Positions 1,541 through 38,999 of a stretch of DNA of 64,000 bases are shown piece by piece. The translations under genes and the position numbers were made by a program. The notes beneath the pieces are model-generated. The model ran no database searches, was not told the DNA's origin, and was given only the letters and a program-made list of their open reading frames with translations. Numbering within the stretch: position 1 is the first letter of the stretch; each line of letters starts with the position of its first letter. The stretch spans positions 248,421-312,420 of IMG/VR virus record IMGVR_UViG_3300032046_000001, one strand, 5' to 3'.

Positions 1541-1561
1541 TTAAAGTGTGATAAAAAATAG

Positions 1562-19723: not shown

Positions 19724-20035
19724 TTACCAAGCTCCCTCACTTTTATATCCAAGATCTTCTATTGAACTCAAATCAAAACCTCGTTCATCTTCGAACATCT
19801 GTTTTAACCTGATTCCCTTATTAATACCTTCTTGTCTCAAACATGCTGATAAATATAAAATATCTTCTCTTAAGTTTTTTAATCGTTGAATTCTGTCTTC
19901 GATTGCTCTATTTACACCTATTGTTTGTTTGTAAGATCTTTGGCTGTCTAAATTATCAATTTCAACTTTTATCAATCTTGCGATTTCAAATAACTCTTCA
20001 CCATCAAAAAATCGACCTATTATTTTATTATCCAT
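19724..20035 (-). CDS. Hypothetical protein
   Basis: ORF track, operon context. Confidence 0.6.
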   Translation of the reverse strand: MDNKIIGRFFDGEELFEIARLIKVEIDNLDSQRSYKQTIGVNRAIEDRIQRLKNLREDILYLSACLRQEGINKGIRLKQMFEDERGFDLSSIEDLGYKSEGAW

Positions 20036-20705
20036 TGAAATCTCGATTTATTAGATTAATCACACTATCTGTTCTAATAAAAAGAGCACCTGCTTTCATC
20101 ATCTCAAATAAGGCATTCTGTTTGCCTTCCTCAGTGATATGATATATACAATCATCAATTACCCATACTTTCTTTCCTCGTTTAAGAAGACCAAGTACAG
20201 CAGCTAAAACACAGTACTCAGTTGCAACACCATATACAAAGAAAGTATCAATATCGAGATATTTTAAACAAAAATCAATATTTTGATTACCACCTGGGTT
20301 CGTTTCATCCCAAAAAACATTATAGCTTTGTTTTTCAAAAGTAATTTGACATGCTGCATCTAAAAGAATTTTTAAAAGTTCTTCACTATACATATCTTCT
20401 GAATCAATATGTATTGAATACTCTGGTGTTGTTGATTCTTCAATTTTACTACAACCATTTGTATCATCTTCACAATGCATTGGAAATGGTCCACCATTTA
20501 CATCAAGTTCTATTTCCGCTTCTTTATGTGCGGTATCTCCAAAATGTCTATCACCACAACCAAGTATTTTAATATTATTTTCATAACCATATTTTGTTAA
20601 TTTAGAAATATTTGGAATAATTTTTTCAGAATCTTTTATATATAATTTACCATTCTTGGTCATAAAATCAACTAACGTATCTACATCAAAAAAAGCGCAT
20701 TTCAT
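20028..20705 (-). CDS. pncA: Nicotinamidase / isochorismatase-family hydrolase
   Basis: DVDTLVDF..GKL, D.H, FPMHC, FEKQSYNVF, YGVATEYCV (catalytic Cys). Confidence 0.9.
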   Translation of the reverse strand: MKCAFFDVDTLVDFMTKNGKLYIKDSEKIIPNISKLTKYGYENNIKILGCGDRHFGDTAHKEAEIELDVNGGPFPMHCEDDTNGCSKIEESTTPEYSIHIDSEDMYSEELLKILLDAACQITFEKQSYNVFWDETNPGGNQNIDFCLKYLDIDTFFVYGVATEYCVLAAVLGLLKRGKKVWVIDDCIYHITEEGKQNALFEMMKAGALFIRTDSVINLINRDFNG

Positions 20706-20980
20706 TTCTTTAGTTCCTCCAACTGTAATTTGATTCTTTCCCTGAGTTCACTTAAATATTCACCAGGATTCCAACCAAAACCTTCAGTGATAAAACTAAC
20801 ATCACTGTCACTCATTCCAATACCTTGGGGTCTGTGTAATATTTCAACTAATCTGGTATATTTAGATTTATTTTTCACAAATTTCTTAATCAATAAATCA
20901 ATATCATCATCGAGCAGGACTCGATCCCTAAGTCTCAGAATCAAGTCCTGCATCTTCTCGAATTTGTTTGTGGTTTTCAT
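20702..20980 (-). CDS. Hypothetical protein
   Basis: ORF track. Confidence 0.55.
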   Translation of the reverse strand: MKTTNKFEKMQDLILRLRDRVLLDDDIDLLIKKFVKNKSKYTRLVEILHRPQGIGMSDSDVSFITEGFGWNPGEYLSELRERIKLQLEELKK

Positions 20981-20987
20981 CCCATTC

Positions 20988-21170
20988 CTATGTTGTTAAT
21001 AAAATATCAATAATTTTATTATTGAGTTTTTTACTCCAGATTACATCAGCAATAAATTCATTATAAGTCCAGCCATTTTTTACCAATTCACTGTTAATTT
21101 CCTCATGATTCAAATTAGGTAACTTAGACTCCAGTAATTTCATCAATTCTTTAAAACCGATCTTCTCCAT
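20988..21170 (-). CDS. Hypothetical protein
   Basis: ORF track with AAAGGA SD. Confidence 0.5.
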   Translation of the reverse strand: MEKIGFKELMKLLESKLPNLNHEEINSELVKNGWTYNEFIADVIWSKKLNNKIIDILLTT

Positions 21171-21200
21171 TTTAACATCCTTTCCTGTAGGCGATTTAAT

Positions 21201-22382
21201 TTAGGCGATCATTTCTTCTGTTATATCATAGTCCTTTTCAGTGTCATCTCTTTCAACTTCAAATTGAAAATCAACCATTAAAGACTCAATAACAGATTTT
21301 AATCCTCTCGCTCCAATCCCCTTTCTGTCAGCGATTTCGGCAATTCTTCTTATAGCATTGTCAGTAAAATTTAAATTAATATTATCAATTTCTAATAATC
21401 TCTGATATTGTTTGATTATTGAATCAACTGGGTCTGTTAAAATACGAGCTAATTCATCAATGGATAATCTATTAAGTACCGACACTATTGGAATTCGGCC
21501 AACTAATTCAGGTATTAAACCATACTGAATAAGATCATCTTGTTCTAAATAATTTAATAAATCGATATCGCGTTCAGCTTTAGACATCTTTGTATTAAAA
21601 CCAATATTATTTTTACATAGACGAGCTGAAACAATATCAGAAAGACCATTAAAGGCACCACCAAATACAAATAATATATTTGATGTATCCATTAACAATC
21701 GATCTCCATGTGGGTGTTTTCTTGCACCTGTTGGTTGAATATTCATTACTGAACCTTCAATCATTTTTAACAAACCAAACTGAACACCTTCACCTGATAC
21801 GTCTCGTGTTATCGATGTACTTGCTGAACTCTTCTTGGCTTTTTTATCAATCTCATCAATAAAAATAATTCCCTTAGATGCTCGTTCAACATCAAAATCA
21901 CAAGCGAGTAATAACATTTGAATCATTGATTCAATATTATCACCCACATAACCTTCTTCGGTTAATGTTGTTGCATCAGCAATAATAAATGGAACTCTCA
22001 ATATTTTTGATAATGTCTGTGCAAAAAGTGTCTTTCCAGATCCAGATGGACCTATTAAAAGAATATTACTTTTTTGGACATTAAGGTTACATAGAATCTT
22101 TAACATATGATTATAGACACCAACAGAAATTATTTTTTTAGTTTTTTCTTGACCAATAATATATTGATCTAAAATAATTTTAATCTCTTTTGGTGTCATG
22201 ATTTTTTGTTTTTTAGGCTTTGAATTTTTAATTTGATCAACTTTAAGATCCGAATTAATATTTTCAGCCGTTAATGCCAATCTTGCTGTATCAATACAAG
22301 AATCACAGATACAAATATTCGGATCGCTCGATTCAATTATTAATTTATAATCTGTACTATGACAGAAGCTACATTCTCTCAT
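21201..22382 (-). CDS. clpX: ATP-dependent Clp protease ATP-binding subunit ClpX
   Basis: CSFC..ICDSC zinc finger, GPSGSGKT, GYVG, FIDEIDK, RDVSGEGVQ, IGF loop, GARGL. Confidence 0.96.
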   Translation of the reverse strand: MRECSFCHSTDYKLIIESSDPNICICDSCIDTARLALTAENINSDLKVDQIKNSKPKKQKIMTPKEIKIILDQYIIGQEKTKKIISVGVYNHMLKILCNLNVQKSNILLIGPSGSGKTLFAQTLSKILRVPFIIADATTLTEEGYVGDNIESMIQMLLLACDFDVERASKGIIFIDEIDKKAKKSSASTSITRDVSGEGVQFGLLKMIEGSVMNIQPTGARKHPHGDRLLMDTSNILFVFGGAFNGLSDIVSARLCKNNIGFNTKMSKAERDIDLLNYLEQDDLIQYGLIPELVGRIPIVSVLNRLSIDELARILTDPVDSIIKQYQRLLEIDNINLNFTDNAIRRIAEIADRKGIGARGLKSVIESLMVDFQFEVERDDTEKDYDITEEMIA

Positions 22383-23050
22383 TCTTCGTAATCATCCTCA
22401 ATTTCATCATATATCATATTTTCTTCTTCAAATAAATTATCACTAACAATACAATTTACTGGTGAAAGACAGTTTCTATCTCTCATTAATTCATATGGTC
22501 TTCCATTTGTTAAATATTGAAGATATCTACACCAAGTTTTATATTTATCCAATCCAAAAATTGAATTTGAATATTTCTTCTTAAACTCATCACTCACATC
22601 TCCAACACAACATGGCATTATAATTAGAAATGGTGATTTTGAATTTTTATATATTTCTATAATTCTAATTGCCAAATTCTTACAAGGATGTGATGCCATG
22701 ATTATCGTATTTTCGTCAATCAAGTCTATTATATCATCATCATAAATATTTTTTTCAATATACTCAAATCGTCTGATTCTCGCATATTTTCTTCTAACTA
22801 TACGTTTATCAATCGCAACAGCTTTTGACACGGGTAATGAAAAAAGAGAAAGTACGCTGGAAATTGGATTTCCAGCGCACAATTCTACAATGTTATATTT
22901 CATTGGATTATCTAAAGTAAGTTTTCGAATTTTTTCCCGTAAAGTCATCGCTTCAGATATCTCTTTACAATATCCACTACCAATAGGTGATAACAATCCT
23001 AATACATCAGAAGAACAACGTAACCTCAAAAACATTTCAACATATTTCAT
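22379..23050 (-). CDS. SAM-dependent methyltransferase-like protein
   Basis: IVELCAGN motif I, HPC..LA, MPCC. Confidence 0.65.
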   Translation of the reverse strand: MKYVEMFLRLRCSSDVLGLLSPIGSGYCKEISEAMTLREKIRKLTLDNPMKYNIVELCAGNPISSVLSLFSLPVSKAVAIDKRIVRRKYARIRRFEYIEKNIYDDDIIDLIDENTIIMASHPCKNLAIRIIEIYKNSKSPFLIIMPCCVGDVSDEFKKKYSNSIFGLDKYKTWCRYLQYLTNGRPYELMRDRNCLSPVNCIVSDNLFEEENMIYDEIEDDYEE

Positions 23051-23064
23051 TTTCTTTATTCTCC

Positions 23065-23640
23065 TTAATATATTTTCATCATACTCTTAATTATTTCACT
23101 GTCATTCTTACTGGAAACAATAGTTGAAATATCATTTGTTCCAAATTTTTTAATTCGAATTGCCCATTCATCGATATCTGAAAATATGTCTAAATATTTA
23201 TGAGTTTCATTAACTCTATCTTCAAGCGTTTGGTTTGGAATCTTATTTATATTTAAATAATCTATTAATAGACTGATTAAAAATTCAAAATTAAAATTTT
23301 GATTTTTTGATCTAACAATCAATTCATGATAAAAACCATCAGCATAAATCGACATTCCTCTATACATCTTAAATTCGTCATCGATATGAAAATTGAAAAA
23401 ACAATTGTGATAATTGTCTTTATACTTGTAACTGAAATTAATTTTCAAATAAAAATTTTTTAAATTTATTTTTTCAATTAGATCATCTGGAATAACAACA
23501 ACACTTAATATTTGTCTTAACTCATTAAGATCTACTTTAGTTTCACTTAAAAATGAAACCATTGCTATTGATCCATAATTGTGATGATTATCAATAAATA
23601 ATATAGACTGTTTAAATTGCTCAATTCCAAAATATGTCAT
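23065..23640 (-). CDS. Hypothetical protein coupled to rpoB
   Basis: ATG overlaps the rpoB stop. Confidence 0.65.
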   Translation of the reverse strand: MTYFGIEQFKQSILFIDNHHNYGSIAMVSFLSETKVDLNELRQILSVVVIPDDLIEKINLKNFYLKINFSYKYKDNYHNCFFNFHIDDEFKMYRGMSIYADGFYHELIVRSKNQNFNFEFLISLLIDYLNINKIPNQTLEDRVNETHKYLDIFSDIDEWAIRIKKFGTNDISTIVSSKNDSEIIKSMMKIY

Positions 23641-26600
23641 TAATCTCCTTTATCGATTCCGATAACTGTTAGATATGAATTTAATAATCGTACAGATTCA
23701 CTTATCATATCATTCTCTTTATAAATTTCATTCCGTAATTTATTTCCAGAATCGATTTGATCAAACATCCATTTATTCTTAGCCTCAATTGAATCAGACT
23801 TGGTTGTCATTGATTCATTCAAATTATGAACAGAATCATGAGCAATCATACAACTAACTTCCATTTCACCAAGTCTTTGACCACCATTATTTCTTTTACC
23901 ACCAGTTGGTTGTAGTGTTTTCTTAGTATATGTTCCAATTCCTCTCGCTGATAATTTATCTTCAGCTATATGAATCATTCGAAAGAAATACAAATACCCT
24001 ACAGCTAAATCATTTACAAGCGTATCACCGGCAACTGGATCATATATTGGATATTTAAATCGAGTGTTTGTATATTTCAACGCTTTTTTACATTGCTTTA
24101 TATTTATCGATTCAAATGGTGGTTGAATCAAAGAAAGATCATCAATAAATTTTTCATCAATCTTGACCATTTTTAATTGATTTTTAAACTGGTTAAAATA
24201 CCAGTTATCTTTTGTATTATCAATAATTTTAATATATTTTAATAAATATTTTTTAATGGTTGATTGTGATAAGATACCCTCCTTCAATTCTTGATATTTG
24301 AGTTTTTCTTCTTCAGATTCAAGTGAATCAATCATTTGTAATAATTCATTATCTTTTTTAATCAAACTTCGCATGTTATTTTTCAGATCCATTAATGACA
24401 TTGCCAAATGAAGTTCAAATAACTGTCCGATGTTCATTCGACTTATTATTCCTAATGGATTGATGATAATATCTAATGGTCTACCATCAGGTAATTTCGG
24501 CATATCTTCAGTTTTGACAATCTTTGAAATAACACCTTTATTGCCGTGTCTATTTCCTATTTTATCGCCAACTTCGATTTTCCGAATATAATATCCTGTT
24601 AGATGAACAAAAATACCATCAAACTTCTCACCTTTAATTTTATACTTACCCTCAGATAAAAAGTTGTTTAAATTATTTTTAGCGAATTTATTATATTCAC
24701 TTTTGGGTAAATATTTTCCCAAGATTTTACTTATTTTTTTCTCTTTTATTTTTTGATCAATAATTTTTTGTTCAATCCAATCTTGAAATTCTTGAGGTAC
24801 ATTCTTAGTTGGATAATCATTGACATAAATATTACTTTCGAGAATACACATCTTTTTGGGAGATATTAAATTTTCATCTTCTTCAAATAACACACTGAAG
24901 TCATTGTTTTGTTGTACTTTTCGTAACATTGCATATGGTTGACCAGTATTAATCCACTCCCCAGGTTCAGGTAATGGTTTATATTCCATAGTCCTCGCAC
25001 GTTCACCATATTCGTCATACTCTTCAGGTTGTGGCTTACATGTATTCAAATTTGAAAGTATTTTATTTGATGGGATAAAGAATGAGAGATCTCGATAATG
25101 AATAGAAGATAAGATTCGTTCATCGACTAATCTTTCGGATATCACTATACCATCTTCATAATTATAACCATAGTATATACCAATACCTGTTAATAAATTT
25201 CTACCAATACTAATATTACGATCCTTTGTAAATAATGATTCAACTAAAATATCACCTTGACGAAATCGTTCTCCCTCTTTGAAGTTCGTTTCCATCATGT
25301 CCATATTATCAGTATAAATTTTCTTGTAACCAGTTTGAATTAATTCGATTTCATCATCATCATACTTGACAATAATAAATCCCTCATCATCGTCATGATA
25401 TAATACAATTCCATCTTTTTTGGCCATCTTAAGAAAGTTTGTATATTGCGTATATAAACTCTCACATCCACTTTGAATCAATGGTTTTTCTGGTTTTCTT
25501 AAAAGGATAGCTTGTCTCATTTGAGACGAGGCCATTTGTAATCTTGTTTGGTCGTCATGCTCTAAAAAAGGCACCATAGCAACTGGAATTGATATGGGAC
25601 TTTTAGATTGAATCTCGCTTGTGAATTTCATATTATGATCTAATTTTGAAGTTGGTAGAATATTTCCGACAATTCCACAATTATCTCTATCTGGTGTATC
25701 AACAACACAAATTCGTCCGAACATTGAATCATTGATATCACGAATATTTTCTGGAACACTCTTTCTTTCGAAACCATTCGGACCCAATAATGATATTCTT
25801 GATAATTCAGTCAATGAATCAATAGGATTTATTGAAAAATCAAATTGAATAATTTCCGATACATTACAGTTCTGTAATATTTCGGATGAATTGATATTAA
25901 ATTTTGGTTTTGAATTTTTAGTTATAATACATAGATTGAATATTGCTTTTGCCACATAACTAAAAATTAAATATTCAAAACATCTAATTCGTTTATTTTC
26001 ATAATTTAAAAAATCAAAAGGTCCATTTTGTATAGCATCAATAAAATCTTCTATAACAGAACCAGTTTTAAGAAATCTGGCTGTTATAACATCAATTTTT
26101 GGTATAAGATCTAATCCATATAATATTTCTTCACCTTTAAGTTTGGCATTATACTTAGTAAAAGTTTCACCCAACATCTTGGTATATTCGTCTTTGGTCT
26201 TATTCATATTATAATATAAATAGACTTGTTTAATTAATCGATTATAAAATGTGTCTTCTAAACCTTCAACGTTTTCCTGACTTAAATTAAATCGTGAATT
26301 TAATACTTCTGGACCATAATAGGCCAATAATAATAATGCGAAAGGTAGTTTTTTATTAAGAAAGGTAAATATGATCGTTTTCTTTTCATAAAGTATTATA
26401 GTCTGGACATTTGATTTAAACTTAATTATAAAACTATCATCTGATTTTTTATTCAATTTTGTTATTATTGGAAAATCGGTAATTTGAAAATGAGGAATCT
26501 TTCTTTTACCATTGATAAAAATATAATTATCGTCAATGAGTTCTGGAATGTTAATACTTAGATCAACTTTTGCCTCATCTTTTGATAAGATAATATTTAA

Positions 26601-26801
26601 ATTTTTCTTAAACGTTTTCTGTAACTCTTCCCCTTGAGATCGACAATCGTTTATTTCAAACTTCTCAATTTTATATCCAATTTCTTTGACTGGTTGTAAT
26701 GCCTCAAATATTTGTCCTTCAAGTTTTTCATATTCACGTTTTCTTAAAGTAAAAATATTATCAACATCATCAATTTTTAGATTCGGATTTTCTATAATCA
26801 T
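23640..26801 (-). CDS. rpoB: DNA-directed RNA polymerase subunit beta (phage-encoded)
   Basis: GRICVVDTPD..NCG, PFLEHDD..R..M.S.QMRQA, GYNYEDG, GDKIGNRHGNKGV, PLGIISRMNIGQL, GGQRLGEME. Confidence 0.96.
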   Translation of the reverse strand: MIIENPNLKIDDVDNIFTLRKREYEKLEGQIFEALQPVKEIGYKIEKFEINDCRSQGEELQKTFKKNLNIILSKDEAKVDLSINIPELIDDNYIFINGKRKIPHFQITDFPIITKLNKKSDDSFIIKFKSNVQTIILYEKKTIIFTFLNKKLPFALLLLAYYGPEVLNSRFNLSQENVEGLEDTFYNRLIKQVYLYYNMNKTKDEYTKMLGETFTKYNAKLKGEEILYGLDLIPKIDVITARFLKTGSVIEDFIDAIQNGPFDFLNYENKRIRCFEYLIFSYVAKAIFNLCIITKNSKPKFNINSSEILQNCNVSEIIQFDFSINPIDSLTELSRISLLGPNGFERKSVPENIRDINDSMFGRICVVDTPDRDNCGIVGNILPTSKLDHNMKFTSEIQSKSPISIPVAMVPFLEHDDQTRLQMASSQMRQAILLRKPEKPLIQSGCESLYTQYTNFLKMAKKDGIVLYHDDDEGFIIVKYDDDEIELIQTGYKKIYTDNMDMMETNFKEGERFRQGDILVESLFTKDRNISIGRNLLTGIGIYYGYNYEDGIVISERLVDERILSSIHYRDLSFFIPSNKILSNLNTCKPQPEEYDEYGERARTMEYKPLPEPGEWINTGQPYAMLRKVQQNNDFSVLFEEDENLISPKKMCILESNIYVNDYPTKNVPQEFQDWIEQKIIDQKIKEKKISKILGKYLPKSEYNKFAKNNLNNFLSEGKYKIKGEKFDGIFVHLTGYYIRKIEVGDKIGNRHGNKGVISKIVKTEDMPKLPDGRPLDIIINPLGIISRMNIGQLFELHLAMSLMDLKNNMRSLIKKDNELLQMIDSLESEEEKLKYQELKEGILSQSTIKKYLLKYIKIIDNTKDNWYFNQFKNQLKMVKIDEKFIDDLSLIQPPFESINIKQCKKALKYTNTRFKYPIYDPVAGDTLVNDLAVGYLYFFRMIHIAEDKLSARGIGTYTKKTLQPTGGKRNNGGQRLGEMEVSCMIAHDSVHNLNESMTTKSDSIEAKNKWMFDQIDSGNKLRNEIYKENDMISESVRLLNSYLTVIGIDKGD

Positions 26802-27068
26802 TTGTCACTTTCATTTTGTTCTGATTTTTCGGATGAATTAAATATCAATATACTCTCCCAATTTATCCTGTCTTCTGTACAGAATTCTTCGTCGAACTTT
26901 GATGAGAAATTATCAATTATATTATTATATGCGATATTGAATTCATTATTTTTTCTTTTTTAAAACATCTTTTAATTTCAGATTTTTTAAATTATCTAAT
27001 TTATTAATGTGATAATAGACTATATTATTATTAATATAGTCTTCAATTTGTCTTGTTAATTCATTCAT
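26798..27068 (-). pseudogene. Internally deleted PmeII/EcoO109I-family type II restriction endonuclease remnant
   Basis: MNELTRQIEDYINNNIVYYHINKLDNLKNLKLKDVLK(R/K)KN joined directly to EFNIAYNNIIDNFSSKFDEEFCTEDRINWESILIFNSSEK; both ends match my recollection of the family termini, the catalytic middle is absent, and there is one extra A in the poly-A at ~26950-26961. Confidence 0.65.
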
Positions 27069-27867
27069 ATAATAACTTTAAAATAATCATCAACTGTTTT
27101 AAAATATTCGTGATTGAGTTCTATTCCGATTCCATGACGATTTAACTTCGCAGCAACTTTTAACGTTGTACCACTTCCCATAAACGGATCTAAAATATTA
27201 TCATTGGGTTGTGTAAAAAGTTTTATAAACCATTCAGGAATCCATATTGGAAACACAGCACTATGATTTTTATTATTACATTCAGTAGCACCATATAAGA
27301 CATTAGTTGGATAAACCATATCTCTTTTGATCCAATTAGAGACGTTTTTTCCAAAACCACTTCCAACTTTCGATTGATCTCTAATTTTATCCGTTTCACT
27401 TAAATTTTTTAATCTTGATTGTGACCAATCACCAATTGGAATCATTACATTATCTTGAAACATGTTGAATTTTTTATCTTTATTGAATTGATAAAGATGT
27501 TCCCATGAATCACGAAATCTATTTGGCCATTTTCCAGGAAAACAGTTCTTTTTATGCCAGATGAATTCCTCAGTCCATAACCATCCCTGTTTTCTCATAG
27601 CCAAAACAAGTTCTATTACATATGTATGTCTTTCTCCTCCAACTGCACACTCTTTTATATTTAAAATAAACGTACCTGTCGGTTTCAAGACTCTTAAAAG
27701 TTCTTGTGATATTGGAATAAACCATTCTATATATTTATCTGGATGTACACCACCGTATGTATTTTTCTCTGATTCGCATATGGTGGAGATGTTAATATTA
27801 AGTCTATTGAATTACTATCTATTTCTTTTAATTTATCTGAACAATCACCAAGTAATAAACGTATCAA
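27065..27867 (-). CDS. N4-C/N6-A DNA methyltransferase, broken by a 1-nt frameshift at the T5 run 27762-27766
   Basis: TTG start with GAGGTG SD; LGDC...IDLILTSPPY, then -1 frame YGG..PDKY.EWF..LRVLKPTG...IWHK...HSAVFP...ILDPFMGSGTT; length 803 = 3n+2. Confidence 0.85.
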
Positions 27868-27883
27868 AACTTTTACACCTCAA

Positions 27884-30667
27884 TTATTTTATTTTCTCTC
27901 CAAGTAGGATCTTATCTATTATTCCTGAATATTGACCAACTTCAAAAAGACCTTTTATGATACTTCTTTTTGGATCTGAAAAACCAAGACTTAGAATCCA
28001 TGATTCGAATGCCGGAACTTGTTGTATACTATGCCATTCTGGTTTAACATTCTCTCTATTTTCAACCAATCTCCATTTTGTATAACCACTCCACATTAAT
28101 TGACTAATGACAGCTTCAATATGAATATGATGAATCTTTCCATTATTATTATAAATTTTGAATAATTTTTCTGCCATTTCACCAGGAATTTGATTATCAC
28201 TAAAATGATGAAAAGCATCACAAGCAACCGAAAGATCAGCAACAATATCATCTTGTTTTAAATCACCATCAGATTTTGCACCTCTAATATTTGCAACACC
28301 TGACGTATGAAATGTTCTTAGAATCAATTGAGTAGACCGTTCACCTAATGTTTGTGCTGCAATAATACCAATATATTTACTATTTAAAATCTTGTAAAGA
28401 TTACCATAACATTTGTGACAAATTTTATTACTTCTACAATATATCGGTGATCTCAAAAGAATGATTTTACCAATTAGATTCTTATAATTTTCTTTTGTAA
28501 TTTCAACATATTCATTATTATCATTTAAATAATAACGATATAATAACATCTCGGCTTTTTGTACAGAATCGACATTGATAGTTAAGTGATCTCTTGTTCC
28601 ACAATCTTCTAAATCAAGATCCTTTTGAAGATTAACACAAGAAAAATTTAATTTTCTTGAAAGATAGCCAGATTCCCCTGTATTTAAAGCAACATCTAAT
28701 AATCCTTTTCTACATCCGTATGTTGATATAAAAAATTCTTCAGGTGTTAAACCATCTAATAAACTCGATTTAACTGGTGTTGGTATAATCTCACCTTTAA
28801 AGTTCGAAATAAAACCTCTTGATAGAATAATTTGTCTTGCTTGATCCCATGTTCCTCTAGATCCAGAACTAATCATATAAGAATAGTTAAAATTTTCTTT
28901 CAAAAAGTTTTCTGTTTCCAGACTGGAAATTTTATTTAACTGGGTTACGATATTATCAGATTCATATAATTCTTTCTTAAGCGAATCATCTTTTAATTCG
29001 AATGAATCCAATGACATTGTTGGACCAAATAAGGTAGCGTATTTAAAACCGCAATTTTTAATCTGATCTAAAATTTCAGCTAGGATCGTGTAGTCATATT
29101 TTGATTTAATATCTTCTAAAATATTTAATAGTTCTTTCTTTGATATTATCTTATCAATTATAGGATAATCATTCGGTAAACAATCATTGAATATTTTTCT
29201 ACTTTCTGTAATTTTTTGACCTTTACAAACGACCATCTTTTTCAATTTTGGAAATTGATTTGAAGTTAATGCGTATATACCAAGAATCATATCTTGAGAA
29301 TGAGTAGTTGTTAATAATCCATTTGCGGGATTACTCAAATTTTTAGTTATTAAAAATTTATCATAGACTTCTTGTTTTGATTCTTCTGATATAGGCACAT
29401 ATACAGCCATCTGATCACCATCAAAATCTGCATTAAAACAACCACAAACTAACGGGTGAATCTTGATTGTATTATTCCCATGAATTCGATATACTGTTTC
29501 ATTATTATCATCTTTCTTTTCGAAAATGACAGAATTATTATTATCTAATTTTATTTTGAAACCTAACATACCCAATCTGTGAAGAGAAGGTTGTCGATTA
29601 ATAATACACACTTGAGGATGTTGTTCAAAATATTCTTTGACAAATTCGAATAAATAATATGATTTTGTAAGAATCGTCTGATCTAATATTTGAATCGCAC
29701 TATTAAGAAATTTAACTATTCCGCGATATGTCATTTCTTTTGCGATGTCAATTTTAAATAATTCAAGAATCATACTATAAGGTAAAATACACTCATCTAA
29801 TTTCAACATTGGATCTGGTGTGATCACAGCCCTACCTGAAAAATCAATTCTCTTACCTAATATATGTCCTCTGATTAAACCATCTTTTTCTGACATTGAC
29901 GATAAAATATAACCATATAGTTCATTCACATCTTTTTGAAGTTGATGATAATATTGATAATATATTTTTTTATCATTCGCAATATCATAGTTTGTATTGG
30001 CCATAATTTCTTTTTTGGTTAATAACCTGATATAGAATCTATTTATTTTATCTACGATTTGGTTACGATTATTTTTTTCTGTGATTTTTGATGCAGGACG
30101 TAAATCAGCAGGTAAGACAATAACTTCATTAATCAATACGTTATGAATATTGTCATATATATATTTCCATTTTGGATCATCCAACTTATATTTTGAAGTT
30201 TCATACAATAATTTTATAACAGCTCCCATTTTATCCCATCTTTCAGAATCAGATGGAATATTATTAGGATCATCTGTCACTAAATATTTTTCACCTTTTT
30301 TATATAATATACTTCTTTCATTTGAAATTAATATATCAACCAGGGATTTAATTTTAGAACCACATAAACTGGAAATCAAATCGTAAAAAATTGGATTCAT
30401 AACTGGTAAAGGAAGTTTGATTTTTGCAAATCTTTTTCTTCTTTCACCACAATTAGTTATTTCCACACCACATATTTTACAAACTTCACCTTCACCAGAA
30501 AGTCCATAAAAAGTTCCACATTGACATGTATAATTTTTTACTGGACCAAAAATCTGTTCAGAAAATAAACCATCTTCTGTAAATCTGCCACGATTATTAA
30601 TTATTTTTGAAGTTTTGATTTCTTTCAAATCTTCACAAAAGTCATGTATATCTAAGAGTTTCGACAT
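27884..30667 (-). CDS. rpoC: DNA-directed RNA polymerase subunit beta' (phage-encoded)
   Basis: IFGP...CQCG..CKICG, LGKRIDFSGRAVI, NRQPSLHR, NADFDGDQMAV, RKGL.D.AL.T..SGYL.RKL, LRTFHTSG. Confidence 0.97.
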   Translation of the reverse strand: MSKLLDIHDFCEDLKEIKTSKIINNRGRFTEDGLFSEQIFGPVKNYTCQCGTFYGLSGEGEVCKICGVEITNCGERRKRFAKIKLPLPVMNPIFYDLISSLCGSKIKSLVDILISNERSILYKKGEKYLVTDDPNNIPSDSERWDKMGAVIKLLYETSKYKLDDPKWKYIYDNIHNVLINEVIVLPADLRPASKITEKNNRNQIVDKINRFYIRLLTKKEIMANTNYDIANDKKIYYQYYHQLQKDVNELYGYILSSMSEKDGLIRGHILGKRIDFSGRAVITPDPMLKLDECILPYSMILELFKIDIAKEMTYRGIVKFLNSAIQILDQTILTKSYYLFEFVKEYFEQHPQVCIINRQPSLHRLGMLGFKIKLDNNNSVIFEKKDDNNETVYRIHGNNTIKIHPLVCGCFNADFDGDQMAVYVPISEESKQEVYDKFLITKNLSNPANGLLTTTHSQDMILGIYALTSNQFPKLKKMVVCKGQKITESRKIFNDCLPNDYPIIDKIISKKELLNILEDIKSKYDYTILAEILDQIKNCGFKYATLFGPTMSLDSFELKDDSLKKELYESDNIVTQLNKISSLETENFLKENFNYSYMISSGSRGTWDQARQIILSRGFISNFKGEIIPTPVKSSLLDGLTPEEFFISTYGCRKGLLDVALNTGESGYLSRKLNFSCVNLQKDLDLEDCGTRDHLTINVDSVQKAEMLLYRYYLNDNNEYVEITKENYKNLIGKIILLRSPIYCRSNKICHKCYGNLYKILNSKYIGIIAAQTLGERSTQLILRTFHTSGVANIRGAKSDGDLKQDDIVADLSVACDAFHHFSDNQIPGEMAEKLFKIYNNNGKIHHIHIEAVISQLMWSGYTKWRLVENRENVKPEWHSIQQVPAFESWILSLGFSDPKRSIIKGLFEVGQYSGIIDKILLGEKIK

Positions 30668-30672
30668 TAATT

Positions 30673-31098
30673 TTATATCCCCAATTTGTGTAAATTAAAA
30701 AAATTTGATATTTTACCAATTATTGAGTTCTCTTTTTTCTCTACCTTTTTCATATATTCTTGATGATCATATGGTTCATACTCTATATAATTAAATGGAG
30801 TGAAATAACAATTATTTAAATTATAAGTTCTGATTAAATTTTCAATTAATTTAATTAAATCATTTGATAATACTTTATATTTGACATTAGCTGATAAACA
30901 AAATAAATCAGTATATGGATCGGCATTACAATGATCAGCATCTAATTTAATACTAATTAATTTATTTTTGCCATCTGTTATTCTAACTGAATATTTATCA
31001 ATTATATAATTTGGATCTATTTTTGTTATTCTGTAAATTTTATTATTATGAATCATTCTCTCAGGTACAAGTTTTTTTGCTATTACAAACTGTTTCAT
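30673..31098 (-). CDS. Hypothetical protein between ThiF2 and rpoC
   Basis: ATG overlaps the stop of 31098..31991; ends 5 nt before rpoC. Confidence 0.65.
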   Translation of the reverse strand: MKQFVIAKKLVPERMIHNNKIYRITKIDPNYIIDKYSVRITDGKNKLISIKLDADHCNADPYTDLFCLSANVKYKVLSNDLIKLIENLIRTYNLNNCYFTPFNYIEYEPYDHQEYMKKVEKKENSIIGKISNFFNLHKLGI

Positions 31099-31991
31099 TA
31101 TGCTGCACCAGACTCTGGAAGAAGATTTATAATATAATTATTTTGAGTCTGTGTAATTGAAATGATGTAATAGAGTTCAGGTTCATTTGAATTATTTATT
31201 AGATGTGACATTGTTGAAATGATATCATTAGCTGATTGAATTGAATTTTTGGGAATTTTTCTAATTGGATATTTATTAGAATCACCAATTGTTATTAGAA
31301 CATCTTTATTTCTATTCTCCTGAATTATATCAGTTACATTCTCTTCAAAATTTAATAATTTCTTAGATGCTTCATAATCTATAATCATGTTTCTATTATT
31401 ATATTTTTTCTTGATATCATTGGATACTTCATCTAAATAATCAAGAGATATTTCTTTCACTATTTGATTATCAATCATATAATTAATAAAACCACTTTGT
31501 AGAAAAGATGTTGCTATCATTGTTGCTTTTCTTAAATCATTTTTTGATAACAGTGTTGTATATCGGCCTTCATAATTCTTATCATATGTTATATTTTTTC
31601 TACAATCTACAACAAGATATCTGGACGTGATATACAATCTAACATCTATTTTATTTTTGCGATTATAAACAAAATCTCGACAATCAATTATTAAATCTGA
31701 ATATGGGAGTTCCGTAATTTCTTCTTCATATCTAGTTGTTAATATTTCAACATCTATATTACTTTGATCTTTTATGATATCATGAAGAACTGTTGTTTTA
31801 TATTTTCCAACATCACTCTTTCTATATATTGAATTATATGTATTCTTCATTTCAACTCTATCATAATCAACCAAGATTAATTTTTGTAAATTATCCAGTT
31901 CGGATAATGATTGAGACAAAAAACTACCTATGGTACCAAGACCAATAACTGCTACTGTTTTTATAGAAGATTCCTCCACAATTTTTTTCAA
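31098..31991 (-). CDS. ThiF/E1-family adenylyltransferase-like protein (second copy, divergent C-terminal half)
   Basis: VAVIGLGTIGS, LVDYDRVEMKN..NSIY..SDVGKYKT, DLIIDCRD. Confidence 0.8.
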   Translation of the reverse strand: MKKIVEESSIKTVAVIGLGTIGSFLSQSLSELDNLQKLILVDYDRVEMKNTYNSIYRKSDVGKYKTTVLHDIIKDQSNIDVEILTTRYEEEITELPYSDLIIDCRDFVYNRKNKIDVRLYITSRYLVVDCRKNITYDKNYEGRYTTLLSKNDLRKATMIATSFLQSGFINYMIDNQIVKEISLDYLDEVSNDIKKKYNNRNMIIDYEASKKLLNFEENVTDIIQENRNKDVLITIGDSNKYPIRKIPKNSIQSANDIISTMSHLINNSNEPELYYIISITQTQNNYIINLLPESGAA

Positions 31992-32111
31992 TATCTAAAA
32001 TTGGTGGGTAATTAAAGTTAAATAAAATATATTTTTAATTTGTTATTTAAATAAATTTTTTATTCCCATAAAAAAATAAAAAAATAAATTAGGATAATTA
32101 TAGGATAAGGG

Positions 32112-32137
32112 AAGGGATGGAATTTCTTCCATCCCTT
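32112..32137 (-). terminator. Hairpin after the Ubl gene
   Basis: AAGGGATGGAA-TTTC-TTCCATCCCTT. Confidence 0.6.
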
Positions 32138-32186
32138 TTTCCACTTATGTACTACACCCGGTATATCATATTATAATATTGGGTTA

Positions 32187-32741
32187 TTAACCCTTGCGAT
32201 CGGCAGGCTTCGTGAACTCCAGGGTCAAATCAGTCGATGTCAAAACGTAGTCGTATGCTACCTCGGTCGTACCGTTGACCAAAGCTTTGGAACCGGCAGC
32301 GATATTGAACGCTCCACTGAGCAAATTGAATACTTCCTGGACTGCATGTCCTACGGTGTCTTCGATCTCCTGTTTGTTGGTACCGCAGGTAACGACAATC
32401 TTGGTGTTGACACAGCCGTCATTGGCATTGGTGACAGTAAACGTACCGGAAACCGCAGCAAGGGCAACCCTGGTAAAATGGGCAATGAGAAGTTCCACCA
32501 AAATAGCCTTGGGTTGTTTTCCCAGACCGGACATACCATTTTCCTCGGCCAGCGTGAGCAGATCGGTAACAGACATTGCATTCAATTGTTCCCGGCTAAG
32601 AACCTCGGATTTCTCGACCATATCGTTCTCAATTACTTTGGCAATCATCTCGACGGTCTGTCCGTCCAATCCAGTGATCCCACGTCCAGCAGCGATTTGA
32701 AGAAGTTCGGCCTTTGACTTACCATTCAGTGCTTGATTCAT
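32187..32741 (-). CDS. Ubiquitin-like (beta-grasp) protein with two N-terminal Rho-N/HeH-like helical repeats
   Basis: Repeats SKAELLQIAAGRGITGL / SVTDLLTLAEENGMSGL; C-terminal domain ...ALVNG.......VL.......LEFTKPADRKG ending in a free Gly like Prok_Ub proteins. Confidence 0.75.
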   Translation of the reverse strand: MNQALNGKSKAELLQIAAGRGITGLDGQTVEMIAKVIENDMVEKSEVLSREQLNAMSVTDLLTLAEENGMSGLGKQPKAILVELLIAHFTRVALAAVSGTFTVTNANDGCVNTKIVVTCGTNKQEIEDTVGHAVQEVFNLLSGAFNIAAGSKALVNGTTEVAYDYVLTSTDLTLEFTKPADRKG

Positions 32742-32914
32742 AAAAATAATTCTCCTTTTGGAAATAGATTAGGTTCACTAAGTGAATCCTTTGAGATAAA
32801 ATACAGCGGCGACATTAATTATTTTTTTCTATCTCCTAAATAATTATAGCACCTCCCTTTGGATTTATCCATGAAGTTAGAGAGTTAAGACAACTCTCTC
32901 TTGATGGATTCTAT

Positions 32915-33181
32915 TTACTGAGTAAATTCCTGAAGCTTTTTCACTTTTCCCTCAATCCAATCAATACGATTCTTGGCATCCTGTTGACCAGCCTTAGCAG
33001 CCGAAATCTGATGATTTAGTTTCTGCACTTTTCGTGTCAAGGATTCAATTCGTTGTTCCTCCATTTGCGATGCCTGTTGAAGTTTCTTCTCAGCAACTGC
33101 AAACATTTTCAATGCGTTACCAAGAACTGTGGGAGCAACATTAATACCAAAATGAGATAATAAAATATAAAACCAGTCCAT
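32915..33181 (-). CDS. Small coiled-coil protein
   Basis: GGAGG SD, heptad pattern. Confidence 0.65.
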   Translation of the reverse strand: MDWFYILLSHFGINVAPTVLGNALKMFAVAEKKLQQASQMEEQRIESLTRKVQKLNHQISAAKAGQQDAKNRIDWIEGKVKKLQEFTQ

Positions 33182-33223
33182 TACAGACCTCCTTTACAAT
33201 ATTAAAAAGTACGAATTGTACCT

Positions 33224-33244
33224 TTCACATATTTATTATATATA
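33224..33244 (-). promoter_or_regulatory. Conserved intergenic motif variant, putative phage promoter (copy 4)
   Basis: TTCACATATTTATTATATATA; first 10 nt identical to consensus. Confidence 0.45.
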
Positions 33245-33297
33245 GATATAATCGTATATACAAGAATTTAAATATTTGGGTGCTTTGTATAATTAAA

Positions 33298-33999
33298 CTA
33301 TACTGGGAACTGTTTGGCTAAAACTTCACCTGTGAGAATATCGAAATCATTCTCACAGGTGGTATCGAGTTGACCAAGGATACAGATCTTGTAAAATCGA
33401 CACAACACAATCCATGCCGCTCCCATGTTTGCGAATAACAATTGTGGTTCTGCTTGATGCAATGCCTCACATCCGAGACGCTGAGGGTGTTGTCCATCAC
33501 CAACGGATATCTCTTCATGGTATCTGGTAATTGACGCAGTGTAGTTTTGTCCTGCAATCCGAACGTTTGTCAAAACATCGCCGGTGTAGAATCCATTACC
33601 CCCAGAAATTAAAACTACATTTTGCAGGGTAGCAACTTTTTCTGCAATCAACGCTCTGGTATCATGATTGTCAACACACACTAATACAATATCATCTTCT
33701 TGGATGATACTACTAATGTTGCTCTCACTGAGATATTCAGGAACCGAATGGATAGTTAAATCATACTTCTGCATGAGTTCGGTGGCTTTAATCTCGGCTT
33801 TATTACCGAAGTTATAAAAATCCTGTCTCTCCCGATTACGCTGCTCGAAGCTATCTCCGTCTACGATAGTTACCTCGAAGGTGTCAGCCTCTTCGCCTTC
33901 TGCTGGTTGCGGATGATAATAATTGAGGAATTGGCACAACGGATCAAGTAATTTAGTACCAATACCACCAGCACCTATAACTTTAATCGACCGATTCAT
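33298..33999 (-). CDS. E1-like ubiquitin-activating ThiF-family enzyme
   Basis: VIGAGGIGT, DGDSFEQRNRERQ, K(A), VCVDNH, GGNG, GCE....PQLLFAN (candidate catalytic Cys). Confidence 0.88.
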   Translation of the reverse strand: MNRSIKVIGAGGIGTKLLDPLCQFLNYYHPQPAEGEEADTFEVTIVDGDSFEQRNRERQDFYNFGNKAEIKATELMQKYDLTIHSVPEYLSESNISSIIQEDDIVLVCVDNHDTRALIAEKVATLQNVVLISGGNGFYTGDVLTNVRIAGQNYTASITRYHEEISVGDGQHPQRLGCEALHQAEPQLLFANMGAAWIVLCRFYKICILGQLDTTCENDFDILTGEVLAKQFPV

Positions 34000-35191
34000 A
34001 TGCTGAAATCTCCTCTTTTGTCATAATGATTACTCCTTCAGAGTCAATCATGTTGCCATTAGAATCATATGATAATTCAAAATCGCGGTTGTTGTTTGGT
34101 GTGTGTTCACCATAACATCCCATAGTTGTCAATAATAAGTCATCGACCAATCCACCTTCCATTGCCTGAATAGCAATATTACGATAATGACACTTTGGAC
34201 AGATGGTATAATCAATTAGTGGATAATAATCTGTATCATCACTACCATAACAATCAGGACGGGCAATTGGAGATGTTGGTGAATATTCAGGAGTTTTAGC
34301 AGGACTTGGAAGATACTTCGTTTCCGACGGAACATATGTGTTGTTTGATTGGGAAGAACATTTGATAAGTTTACCACCAACGAATTTATATACTACATCG
34401 GGTGTATAAACCATGTTCTCATACCATTCTATGGGAACCTCAACAGCATCCATATCAACGTCTAAACTAAAATGAAATTTAGTTGCAACCGATTGCGCTG
34501 TTACATCTGTCATATTATGAGTCGATACTTTAGATGCGGCATAATCTTCCCATACAGCACCCGAAGACACATACTTGGTTTCTTCCCGACTTGTGATTGT
34601 AACATCAAGATATCTTAATATTTCCTCCTCTTTAAGTTGAAATCTATTGCCGTTAATAACAATCGCTGCCGTGACCGATGGGGTATCTGTATTTATGTGT
34701 CCAAACACAATATGAATACCATCCAACTCACCCTCACTACCTTTGTCGGTACCACTATGAAACGCCGACATTGCACCACCGTGTGAGTGTAGTGTTCCAA
34801 CATACATAAAATCTTTCGGTGGACTGGAATTCTTCCAATCCGTTGACGCGCCCGAAATTTTCTGATTGGGAACATCAAATAAATAAAACTCGGTATATGG
34901 ATTATAGAAAATCCGTATACCAGCTTCAGATTTGTACGTTTCATAGATCTGTTTGAAAAACTTAAGACCTTGAGCTAACAAATCTTTGTGAATCTTCGGT
35001 ATCTTCATCTCCCCAAACGGTTGTAGTTTGGGGAGATGACTGATTCCATTAACCTTAGTTAAACTTCTCAATAATTGTTGATTCTTTAGAACAAAGTTGC
35101 CGTTACCGGCAACGATGTATAAAAGATCCTGGTCTTCAGGCAAGACATAATCCTTCGGTAATATAATAACAGGAATTTCACCAAATTTCAT
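33983..35191 (-). CDS. JAB/MPN (JAMM) metalloisopeptidase with C-terminal extension
   Basis: SEAG, P.Q..S, GTLHSHG.MSAFHSGTD, GIHIVFG; start placed at ATG 35191 just after the upstream stop. Confidence 0.88.
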   Translation of the reverse strand: MKFGEIPVIILPKDYVLPEDQDLLYIVAGNGNFVLKNQQLLRSLTKVNGISHLPKLQPFGEMKIPKIHKDLLAQGLKFFKQIYETYKSEAGIRIFYNPYTEFYLFDVPNQKISGASTDWKNSSPPKDFMYVGTLHSHGGAMSAFHSGTDKGSEGELDGIHIVFGHINTDTPSVTAAIVINGNRFQLKEEEILRYLDVTITSREETKYVSSGAVWEDYAASKVSTHNMTDVTAQSVATKFHFSLDVDMDAVEVPIEWYENMVYTPDVVYKFVGGKLIKCSSQSNNTYVPSETKYLPSPAKTPEYSPTSPIARPDCYGSDDTDYYPLIDYTICPKCHYRNIAIQAMEGGLVDDLLLTTMGCYGEHTPNNNRDFELSYDSNGNMIDSEGVIIMTKEEISAYESVD

Positions 35192-35192
35192 A

Positions 35193-37607: not shown

Positions 37608-37636
37608 GATAACATCCTTTCCAAGTAATATAAAAT

Positions 37637-38620
37637 TTAATTTCTCTTATCTGCATGGATTAGATCATTATAATCGTATGCAGATGTCATGATACAACTC
37701 GTCCAATTACATCCCTCACAAACTTTATTTTGGTCATATTGTAAATTATTTTTCAATTCATCCAGATTCATTAAATATTCATCAATTGTCATTGATGGTG
37801 TTTTCAATCCTCTGATTCTTAAACATAACCTAACCATACCATCTGCATCGATAACAATATTATCCAGTGATTGAACATGGCATTTGAAATTATAGGGTAA
37901 ATTTTCATATAATATCTTCAAACTTTGAGGCATATGAATATTATAGTTTTTTGCCTGTTCTAATATTTCTTTCAATTCAGGTGTTTTGTGGACTATCAAG
38001 TCGCTATTTTTTTCTATTCCAGCAAAATCATAATATTTATTTTTATAAGCATCAATAAAAGATATTACACTATTGATACCATGACCAGTTAAAAGTTCCA
38101 ATGTTTTAATTAAATATTTATAATTTCTGCTATCACATGTTACTTCCGCAACAGGATCTTTTATTCTGTCTTTATATTTTAATAAACAATTCAATCCATA
38201 GAGACTTTTAAAATATCTGTCCTTATCATACTGTTCACTGAATATTATGGGGTCGATTGAAGTTGTAAAACCCATTACTTCTCCAACTTCTGAAAAAAAT
38301 CGATCTAATAAATCTGTACATGTACCATTAGAAATTATCGTGTATAAAATACTGTTTTCATTACAGTATTTTATAATATCAATTAAGTCATTATGAAGTA
38401 ATGGTTCACCTCCCATAAAAATATGAAAACATTCTGGATTATTAATTTTCATCAAGTCCAGTATTTTCACTATATTAATATATTTAATTTGATACTTATT
38501 AAAATAATAAATATTTGGATATGGAGCATCGAGATAATATTTTGCAATCCTACAATACTCACAGCTTAAATTACATTGTCTATTCAAAAACCAAGTCATG
38601 ACCTTTATATCTTTTATCAT
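37637..38620 (-). CDS. Radical SAM enzyme with C-terminal Cys cluster
   Basis: CNLSCEYC, FMGGEPLL, ISNG, IDADG.V.LC, CEGCNWTSC. Confidence 0.9.
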   Translation of the reverse strand: MIKDIKVMTWFLNRQCNLSCEYCRIAKYYLDAPYPNIYYFNKYQIKYINIVKILDLMKINNPECFHIFMGGEPLLHNDLIDIIKYCNENSILYTIISNGTCTDLLDRFFSEVGEVMGFTTSIDPIIFSEQYDKDRYFKSLYGLNCLLKYKDRIKDPVAEVTCDSRNYKYLIKTLELLTGHGINSVISFIDAYKNKYYDFAGIEKNSDLIVHKTPELKEILEQAKNYNIHMPQSLKILYENLPYNFKCHVQSLDNIVIDADGMVRLCLRIRGLKTPSMTIDEYLMNLDELKNNLQYDQNKVCEGCNWTSCIMTSAYDYNDLIHADKRN

Positions 38621-38675
38621 TTTAACTCCAAATAAAATAAAAACATTTAATTTTTTTTAAAAAAATTAAAACATC

Positions 38676-38711
38676 AAATAAGGAGAGAGAATAAGTTCTC
38701 TCTCCTTATTT
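38676..38711 (-). terminator. Perfect 16-bp hairpin terminator after porin operon
   Basis: AAATAAGGAGAGAGAA-TAAG-TTCTCTCTCCTTATTT. Confidence 0.75.
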
Positions 38712-38732
38712 AGCCACCATCATCGGAACATC

Positions 38733-38999
38733 CTACTTCTTCTTAGTCTTTTCTCGTGGGAAATAGGCGGGTGATTGTAGATAATCCTTCATCCAGTGAT
38801 TTCTTTCAGCCTTCTGGAAGTTCTGATACTGATCATAATTCATGCCATAATTATGATAATACTCGGCATCCCGCTCCAATTTGTTTTGACCACAACCAAA
38901 TATAGGCATAAATAACAAAACACATACAATACATATGAAATAATTTTTCATAAATTTTCTCCTATAAAGGGAAGGAAAATATTTCTCCTTCCCAGTCAA
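38733..38999 (-). CDS. Small lipoprotein (probable start MKNYFICI)
   Basis: LLFMPIFGC lipobox. Confidence 0.65.
   Translation of the reverse strand: MTGKEKYFPSLYRRKFMKNYFICIVCVLLFMPIFGCGQNKLERDAEYYHNYGMNYDQYQNFQKAERNHWMKDYLQSPAYFPREKTKKK

What the first reader, a model, noticed from the sequence alone, without database searches (positions are those of the whole stretch)
26798..27068. Restriction endonuclease gutted by internal deletion, left as a coupling spacer to rpoB
Seen: the N- and C-terminal ends of a PmeII/EcoO109I-like enzyme are fused at an A-rich KxKN junction. The remnant overlaps the methylase stop (ATGA) and the rpoB start (ATGA), and removing one A gives a continuous 89-aa ORF. 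Family assignment is from recalled sequence features. Inference: the phage captured a host R-M pair between rpoC and rpoB, deleted the toxic core, and may keep the remnant for translational coupling or as a dominant-negative subunit against the host enzyme.
Basis: partly seen in the sequence, partly recalled or inferred. Interest (0 to 1): 0.6.

Follow-up and report, generated by a model that had tools for sequence, protein, structure and literature searches.

The report
Decayed restriction-modification cassette in phage RNAP operon
A jumbo phage picked up a bacterial restriction-modification gene pair exactly between its two RNA polymerase genes, and what remains is a gutted, frameshifted restriction-enzyme stub next to a broken methylase: a gene fossil caught in three stages of decay, not a working system.

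Summary
Window 26798-27068 (minus strand) carries the first ~40 and last ~50 codons of an EcoO109I-family (PF14511) restriction endonuclease. They are fused at an A6-G-A6 tract, with ATGA overlaps to the methylase stop and to the rpoB start. About 70 bacterial homologues of the neighbouring methylase have a ~250-aa PF14511 gene directly downstream that matches both pieces. About 161 codons are missing, including the conserved core.

Relatives with 88% identical rpoB have an empty site, with rpoC and rpoB abutting or overlapping, so the cassette is an insertion. Another relative has an HNH homing endonuclease at the same junction.

Three alleles exist in near-identical phages:
- this window, which has one extra A;
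- a 55-aa ORF next to a truncated methylase.

In this window the methylase is also frameshifted.

The best reading is a decaying R-M fossil. Its only plausible remaining role is in cis, supplying the start context for rpoB. Translational coupling is broken in this genome. Dominant-negative action has no support. This is a new member of a known kind, of modest interest.

The parts
27884..30667 (-). rpoC-like (beta-prime) gene, 927 aa. Its stop lies 16 nt upstream of the methylase start.
   Evidence: Pfam RNA_pol_Rpb1 domains 1-5. The same C-terminus (LLGEKIK) is found in relatives L089 and L093.
27868..27883 (-). Left boundary of the inserted cassette: a 16-nt spacer with a GAGGTG Shine-Dalgarno-like box ahead of the methylase TTG start.
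   Evidence: Sequence. The alignment to the empty site in L089 ends at the rpoC stop.
27727..27867 (-). Methylase pseudogene, 5' piece. It has 46 codons including the TSPPY motif, then runs out of frame into a stop.
   Evidence: Alignment to 40 bacterial homologues.
27762..27766 (-). A5 run where homologues need A6 (QRK|NTYGG). This is the -1 frameshift that breaks the methylase.
   Evidence: Sister contigs carry the extra base here (table 4).
27065..27781 (-). Methylase pseudogene, 3' piece (open frame; the listed ORF runs from TTG 27688, 207 aa). It matches PF01555 N6_N4_Mtase and contains the FMGSGTT SAM-binding motif.
   Evidence: Pfam E 4e-32. It is 71% identical on average to bacterial homologues.
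26946..27068 (-). REase remnant, N-terminal piece. It has 40 codons plus TAA, and its ATG overlaps the methylase TGA (ATGA).
   Evidence: PF14511 positions 2-34, 22.9 bits. phmmer matches to residues ~5-45 of full-length bacterial members.
26949..26961 (-). Deletion junction and frameshift site, A6-G-A6. Both sides of the ancestral gene encode K-x-K-N here. This window has one A more than the in-frame allele.
   Evidence: Alignment. P0121 reads VLKRKNNEF across the junction.
26798..26959 (-). REase remnant, C-terminal piece. It has 53 codons in the +1 frame with no canonical start until the internal TTG at 26846-26848. Its TGA overlaps the rpoB ATG (ATGA).
   Evidence: phmmer E down to 9e-11 against residues ~200-250 of full-length members. 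It is 100% identical in the sister contigs L090-L092.
26798..26859 (-). Possible mini-ORF (inference only). GGGAG (26859-26855), a 6-nt gap, then TTG (26848-26846) open a 16-codon ORF that ends in the ATGA of rpoB.
   Evidence: Read from the sequence. The phage uses SD boxes: 55% of ORF starts against 5% background. Not tested.
23640..26801 (-). rpoB-like (beta) gene, 1053 aa. There is no GGAG/GAGG/AGGA core within 20 nt upstream of its ATG.
   Evidence: Pfam RNA_pol_Rpb2 domains 3, 6 and 7; sequence.

Best explanation
This is the fossil of a Type II restriction-modification cassette: a beta-class N4/N6 methylase followed by an EcoO109I-family endonuclease. The cassette inserted precisely into the tight rpoC|rpoB junction of a 312-kb jumbo phage.

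Proposed history:
1. An in-frame deletion of about 161 codons disarmed the endonuclease. The deletion fell between two A-rich stretches that both encode K-x-K-N. It removed the family's conserved central residues, which I read as the PD-(D/E)XK core, and left an 89-codon ORF.
2. In this genome a further A (A5 to A6) split that ORF into a 40-codon piece and an unstartable 53-codon piece.
3. The methylase lost one A (A6 to A5). Neither enzyme can now be made whole.

The remnant most likely makes no functional protein here. It persists because the loss is recent and because its 3' end now forms the sequence immediately upstream of the essential rpoB start, so deletions cannot run through it.

Shown: homology, the deletion, the insertion, both frameshifts and the allelic series. 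Inferred: the microhomology mechanism, neutrality, and the cis constraint.
For: - Homology of both pieces to the ends of full-length PF14511 genes that lie downstream of the same methylase in ~70 bacterial loci.
- Fold of a full-length member matches EcoO109I.
- Family-invariant E69/E70, D100 and K115 all lie in the missing residues 42-202.
- Empty sites in relatives.
- An HNH homing endonuclease sits at the same junction in L094.
- Methylase frameshift.
- Three alleles: the intact 89-aa P0121; this window; and the 55-aa P0122 with a methylase truncated at 191 aa that lacks the SAM-binding motif.
- The remnant is 35-36% identical to bacterial REases, which are 55-61% identical to each other over the same columns. 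The methylase figures are 71% against 83%.
- Remnant GC is 21.8%, against 30.5% for the methylase and 28% for the flanks.
- The frameshifts are concentrated in the cassette: 2 of 11 A/T runs of 5 or more bases there, against 0 of 60 in rpoB plus rpoC.
- An independent Logan assembly of the source sample is identical at both sites (records 1 and 8).
- No promoter excess and no terminator in the cassette.
Against: - Two of the three alleles keep an uninterrupted ORF that ends in the ATGA of rpoB. That could reflect selection for translation up to rpoB rather than neutrality.
- The C piece is 100% identical between alleles. However, identical stretches of 130-490 nt also occur elsewhere between these mosaic genomes, so this says little either way.
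- Both frameshifts lie in homopolymers and rest on one sample's reads.
- There are no expression data.
Confidence: 0.68

Rival explanations
1. The remnant is kept by selection as a translational bridge. Ribosomes are handed from rpoC through the methylase ORF and the remnant ORF to the rpoB start by stop-start overlaps. This replaces the ancestral direct rpoC/rpoB overlap that the insertion destroyed.
For: - The ancestral junction is a 4-nt overlap in L093 and in the P0033 contig.
- rpoB has no SD core, although 55% of this phage's ORFs have one.
- Allele A (89 aa) has 4-nt overlaps on both sides.
- Allele C keeps an open, overlapping chain despite a net 338-nt loss: the 191-aa methylase stub, then the 55-aa ORF, then rpoB.
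Against: - In this window the chain is broken twice. The methylase stops after 46 codons, and the remnant stops 145 nt before rpoB. Yet this allele is the consensus of a complete 312-kb genome, and identical pieces occur in a second sediment sample.
- 4-nt overlaps are common in this genome (51 of 457 neighbouring same-strand pairs), so they are not a special mark.
- An internal GGGAG-N6-TTG could serve rpoB without the rest of the remnant.
Confidence: 0.15
2. The two frameshifts are homopolymer errors of the assembly. On this reading the phage really carries an intact methylase and the intact 89-aa ORF.
For: Both lie in A runs. Sister contigs have A6 in the methylase. An in-frame 89-aa allele exists elsewhere.
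Against: - Logan's separate assembly of the same sample agrees at both sites with no differences.
- None of the 60 comparable runs in rpoB plus rpoC is shifted.
- Long ORFs are intact genome-wide: 27 of 500 aa or more.
- Even if this were true, the endonuclease core is still deleted.
Confidence: 0.1
3. The remnant peptide (89 or 55 aa) keeps the terminal helices of the endonuclease. It poisons a related host enzyme by forming inactive heterodimers, acting as an anti-restriction decoy.
For: - The retained parts are helical in the full-length model: H6-29, H203-224 and H233-241.
- EcoO109I is described as having an elaborate dimerisation interface and a more elaborate C-terminal side (PMC7337904).
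- From my own recollection, not checked here, the terminal helices of EcoO109I form its dimerisation domain.
- Two alleles keep an open ORF.
Against: - The ORF is frameshifted in this genome.
- Allele C drops nearly the whole N-terminal helix.
- The single-sequence fold of P0121 has pLDDT 49.
- The word search found no small homologues outside this lineage.
- The remnant has diverged more than the methylase and is the most AT-rich segment.
Confidence: 0.05
4. The A-rich junction is a programmed +1 frameshift or transcriptional slippage site that tunes remnant and rpoB expression.
For: A tRNA-Lys could re-pair perfectly one base forward within AAA-AAA, just before a TAA stop (sequence).
Against: The site is not conserved. 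Allele A is in frame with A5-G-A6, and allele C has G-A4. A6 is short for polymerase slippage. The methylase needs the opposite shift.
Confidence: 0.02

Closest known systems
EcoO109I-family Type IIP restriction endonucleases (Pfam PF14511; PDB 1WTD/1WTE)
   Same: Both ends of the remnant are homologous to the ends of full-length family members. Those members sit downstream of the same methylase, as in the phage.
   Different: About 161 of ~247 codons are gone, including all central invariant residues. The rest is frameshifted. It cannot be an endonuclease.
Phage and giant-virus orphan DNA methyltransferases of bacterial R-M origin, including pseudogenised viral methylases (PMC7253447; Murphy et al. 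2013, cited there as PMC3837797 and not read here)
   Same: A virus carries a bacterial-type methylase without a working partner. Viral methylases are reported as recently pseudogenised or truncated (PMC7253447).
   Different: Here the partner's stub is still visible, and the methylase is also broken. The locus is past the orphan-methylase stage. Three decay states are seen side by side.
Free-standing homing endonuclease genes inserted between essential phage genes
   Same: The insertion site is the same: relative L094 has a NUMOD4/HNH gene between rpoC and rpoB, and an intein inside rpoC. The packing is tight, with stop-start overlaps.
   Different: The cargo is an R-M pair, not a homing nuclease. 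No evidence was found for how it moved.
Translational coupling through overlapping stop and start codons (ATGA/TTGA)
   Same: Relatives join rpoC and rpoB this way. The cassette keeps ATGA at both ends of the remnant.
   Different: In this window the upstream ORF ends 145 nt early, so classical coupling cannot operate unless it uses the 16-codon internal ORF.

Membership tests
PF14511 RE_EcoO109I endonuclease | Match to the family profile above the curated cut-off | tested here: met
   The N piece scores 22.9 bits against a cut-off of 22.5, but only over profile positions 2-34 of 198. The genome-wide scan gave 19 bits, below the cut-off. This is membership by descent only.
PF14511 RE_EcoO109I endonuclease | C-terminal region homologous to full-length members | tested here: met
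   phmmer E 9e-11 to residues ~200-250 of ~250-aa PF14511 proteins. 10 of 14 highly conserved columns are kept.
PF14511 RE_EcoO109I endonuclease | PD-(D/E)XK catalytic core present | tested here: not met
   Residues 42-202 are absent, including invariant E69, E70, D100 and K115.
PF14511 RE_EcoO109I endonuclease | Single open reading frame of about 250 aa | tested here: not met
   There are 89 codons in two frames.
Functional Type II R-M system | Intact cognate methyltransferase with catalytic motif (SPPY) and SAM-binding motif in one frame | tested here: not met
   A missing A at 27762-27766 puts TSPPY out of frame with the rest of the methylase, including FMGSGTT.
Functional Type II R-M system | Methylase and endonuclease genes adjacent | tested here: met
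   The order and spacing are the same as in about 70 bacterial loci.
Translationally coupled gene pair | Upstream ORF is translated up to the downstream start | tested here: not met
   The remnant ORF stops at 26946, and rpoB starts at 26801. The feature is met in allele A and allele C.
Programmed ribosomal frameshift site | Slippery sequence conserved among relatives | tested here: not met
   The A-run lengths differ in all three alleles.
Anti-restriction protein (dominant-negative subunit) | Binds and inhibits the full-length enzyme | tested here: inconclusive
   The complex prediction gave no answer. The fold is low-confidence. A bench test is needed.

The most novel reading that the evidence does not exclude
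The lineage keeps a small ORF made of the endonuclease's terminal helices (89 aa, or 55 aa in the sister phage) because it does something. It might carry ribosomes to the SD-less rpoB start, or act as a decoy subunit against a host EcoO109I-family enzyme. On this reading the frameshift in this window is a very recent loss.
Probability: 0.15. Interest if true: 0.6.

Novelty: new member of a known kind. Interest (0 to 1): 0.33.

Why it matters
This locus gives a dated, stepwise picture of how a virus gains and then loses a restriction-modification pair. The steps are insertion at a hot spot between two essential polymerase genes, disarming of the nuclease by a microhomology deletion, and then loss of the methylase by two independent routes. 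All stages are preserved in environmental sequence.

It also flags the rpoC|rpoB junction of this jumbo-phage clade as a landing site for selfish DNA. It offers three natural alleles plus an empty site for testing whether rpoB translation depends on coupling. It does not reveal a new mechanism.

Tried and rejected
- Direct PDB sequence searches found nothing useful. I tried both pieces, a full-length homologue, and a 37-sequence profile. None found EcoO109I. Only the fold search did.
- tblastn of the N piece against plasmids gave no match.
- The PF14511 scan of the phage genome found only the N piece.
- NCBIfam has no model for the endonuclease or its pieces.
- IMG/VR holds only one distant relative of the rpoB gene, L005. 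I did not examine it further.
- The single-sequence fold of the 89-aa allele had pLDDT 49 and is not interpretable.
- Complex prediction of the 89-aa allele with a full-length bacterial enzyme gave no answer. It is not evidence either way.
- The promoter and terminator scan of 26600-28000 found 14 promoter-like sites against 9.3±3.1 expected, and no terminator. There is no sign of an own promoter for rpoB in the remnant.
- I considered the zero differences in the C piece between alleles as a sign of selection and rejected it. Divergence between these phages is patchy, and equally long identical stretches occur elsewhere.
- DNA of the allele A contig could not be fetched because the sample file is too large. 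The paper describing the EcoO109I domains (PMC2711268) is not held. So the idea that the terminal helices form the dimerisation domain stays a recollection.

Full report
**Setting.** The window is the last 64 kb of a 312,420-bp IMG/VR virus record with direct terminal repeats. GC is 28.6%. In the region studied the genes lie on the minus strand. The gene order is:
- an rpoC-like gene at 27884-30667 (927 aa, Rpb1 domains);
- a PF01555 methylase in two frames (27727-27867 and 27065-27781);
- the flagged stretch at 26798-27068;
- an rpoB-like gene at 23640-26801 (1053 aa, Rpb2 domains).

**The observation.** The sequence is as described.
- An ATG at 27068 shares ATGA with the methylase stop and opens 40 codons that end at TAA 26948-26946.
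- The +1 frame is then open for 53 codons, down to a TGA that shares ATGA with the rpoB start.
- The two frames meet in A6-G-A6 (26961-26949). Deleting one A gives 89 codons.

**Family assignment.**
- The N piece reaches the PF14511 (RE_EcoO109I) cut-off, but only over profile positions 2-34 (22.9 bits against 22.5).
- The C piece has no Pfam, NCBIfam or PDB sequence hit.
- The decisive test used the neighbour. The methylase has more than 590 bacterial homologues, and I fetched the best 80 with flanks.
- In about 70 of these loci the ORF directly downstream is ~250 aa long. It matches the N piece at its residues ~5-45 and the C piece at its residues ~200-250, with E down to 9e-11.
- Five such ORFs score E 1e-80 to 1e-94 on PF14511. 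The Pfam model ends near residue 203, which explains why the C piece has no Pfam hit.
- A model built from a 37-sequence alignment (pLDDT 84.6) matches the EcoO109I structures 1WTE and 1WTD at TM 0.64-0.70.

**The deletion.** In the alignment the full-length proteins read ...LKLKxVLK[KR]KNP|YLFKAK... near residue 40, and ...PLGHKAKE[KR]N[DN]EF... near residue 200.
- Both sides encode K-x-K-N in A-rich codons, and the remnant joins them.
- About 161 codons are missing (residues 42-202 of the 247-aa reference).
- The missing part holds the family-invariant E69, E70, D100 and K115. I read these as the nuclease core, by analogy with PD-(D/E)XK enzymes.
- A microhomology-mediated deletion is the likely cause. 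This is an inference, because no full-length allele of the phage itself was found.

**Insertion and empty sites.**
- Two metagenomic relatives with 88% identical rpoB lack the cassette. In L093 the rpoC stop and the rpoB start overlap as TTGA. In L089 they are 28 nt apart, with a GGAG box between them.
- More distant relatives show a 12-nt gap (61% identity) and a 4-nt overlap (51%).
- One relative (58%) has a NUMOD4/HNH homing endonuclease gene at the junction, and an intein in rpoC.
- So the junction is ancestrally tight and has been invaded more than once by selfish DNA.
- The donor cannot be named. The best methylase matches are 71-75% identical in protein and up to 77% in DNA. They come from Bacteroidota, Chlorobiota, Proteobacteria, Nitrospinota and others.

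**Three alleles.** Contigs of public runs and a word search of the protein collection show three states in phages whose rpoB is 98-100% identical where it could be compared (alleles B and C; only the 5' part of rpoB is on the allele A contig).
- **Allele A.** This 1177-nt JGI contig carries an intact 89-aa ORF (P0121) that reads VLKRKNNEF across the junction. It has 4-nt overlaps to the methylase end and to rpoB. It shows that the deletion was in frame and that the extra A came later.
- **Allele B.** This is the window. It has A6 instead of A5 in the first run, and the methylase has A5 where all homologues need A6 (QRK|NTYGG). Logan's separate assembly of the source sample agrees at both sites.
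- **Allele C.** Soil contigs L090-L092 have the methylase run intact. However, 26953-27305 (353 nt) is replaced by 15 nt. This removes the methylase's SAM-binding third and most of the N piece. It leaves a 191-aa stub overlapping a 55-aa ORF (P0122, starting MTIEENNEF...) that still ends in the ATGA of rpoB.

**Signs of decay.**
- The remnant is 35-36% identical to bacterial endonucleases, which are 55-61% identical to each other over the same columns. The methylase is 71% against 83%.
- The remnant is the most AT-rich segment, at 21.8% GC. The methylase is 30.5% and the polymerase genes are 28%.
- Frameshifts hit 2 of 11 A/T runs of 5 or more bases in the cassette, and none of 60 in rpoB plus rpoC. 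My calculation gives a Fisher probability of about 0.02. This argues against general homopolymer error.

**Function.** In this genome neither enzyme can be made.
- Coupling is interrupted. The methylase frame stops after 46 codons, and the remnant stops 145 nt before rpoB.
- rpoB lacks an SD core, although 55% of ORF starts in this phage have one, against 5% background.
- Inside the C piece, GGGAG followed after 6 nt by TTG opens a 16-codon ORF that ends in the rpoB ATGA. This could feed rpoB, but it is only read from the sequence.
- Alleles A and C do keep an unbroken chain of overlapping ORFs from rpoC to rpoB. This is the best argument for a selected bridge. Against it, allele B is the consensus of a complete genome and is seen in a second sample. 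Also, 4-nt overlaps are common here (51 of 457 pairs).
- The decoy idea has no support. The fold has low confidence, the complex test gave no answer, and there are no small homologues outside this lineage.

**Verdict.** The capture-and-gutting story is supported and now has an empty site and an allelic series. The proposed present-day functions are not supported for this genome. This is an R-M fossil in a phage polymerase operon, a new member of a known kind.

Noticed in passing
window 27762-27766 (and 27065-27867): The methylase next to the remnant is itself a pseudogene in this genome, with one A missing between the TSPPY motif and TYGG. Sister phages have the A but lack the last third of the gene. 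The methylase has therefore been lost twice independently.
   Followed up: yes
L094 3803-4516 (relative, rpoB 58% identical): A NUMOD4/HNH homing endonuclease gene sits at the same rpoC|rpoB junction. The rpoC there carries an intein (1288-aa product with Intein_splicing). L093 also has two NUMOD4/HNH genes just upstream of rpoC.
   Followed up: partly
window 32000-40000: A block of higher GC (34.5-39.8%, against about 27% around it). It holds a second ThiF-like gene, a radical SAM gene, and ORFs of 426, 804 and 331 aa with no clear family (the 331-aa one has only a below-threshold porin-like hit). It may be another foreign insertion upstream of the ThiF-141aa-rpoC block that relatives share.
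   Followed up: partly
window 23640-30667: The rpoB-like and rpoC-like genes are unsplit and short (about 1000 and 930 aa). They define a large clade: 618 proteins at E<=1e-50, on contigs up to 277 kb. Two close relatives are filed in NCBI under Candidatus Thorarchaeota MAGs, one on a 255-kb contig. These are probably phage contigs binned by mistake, but the host is open.
   Followed up: no
window 20019-32033 versus L090: Divergence from the sister phage is patchy: 88% identity at 31129-32033, 97.4% over rpoC, 93% over rpoB and downstream. Differences cluster (for example at 27971-28022), and stretches of up to ~490 nt are identical. This suggests mosaic recombination between lineages.
   Followed up: partly
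window 65-1632: Three tRNA genes lie on the minus strand: Trp-CCA, Ile-TAT and Glu-TTC.
   Followed up: no
window 27453-27830 (run X2, contig record 11): A second sediment sample holds a 2061-nt contig with a methylase about 85-90% identical to this one and in frame at the A run. It could be another phage or a bacterium carrying a closer copy of the cassette than any genome fetched here.
   Followed up: no
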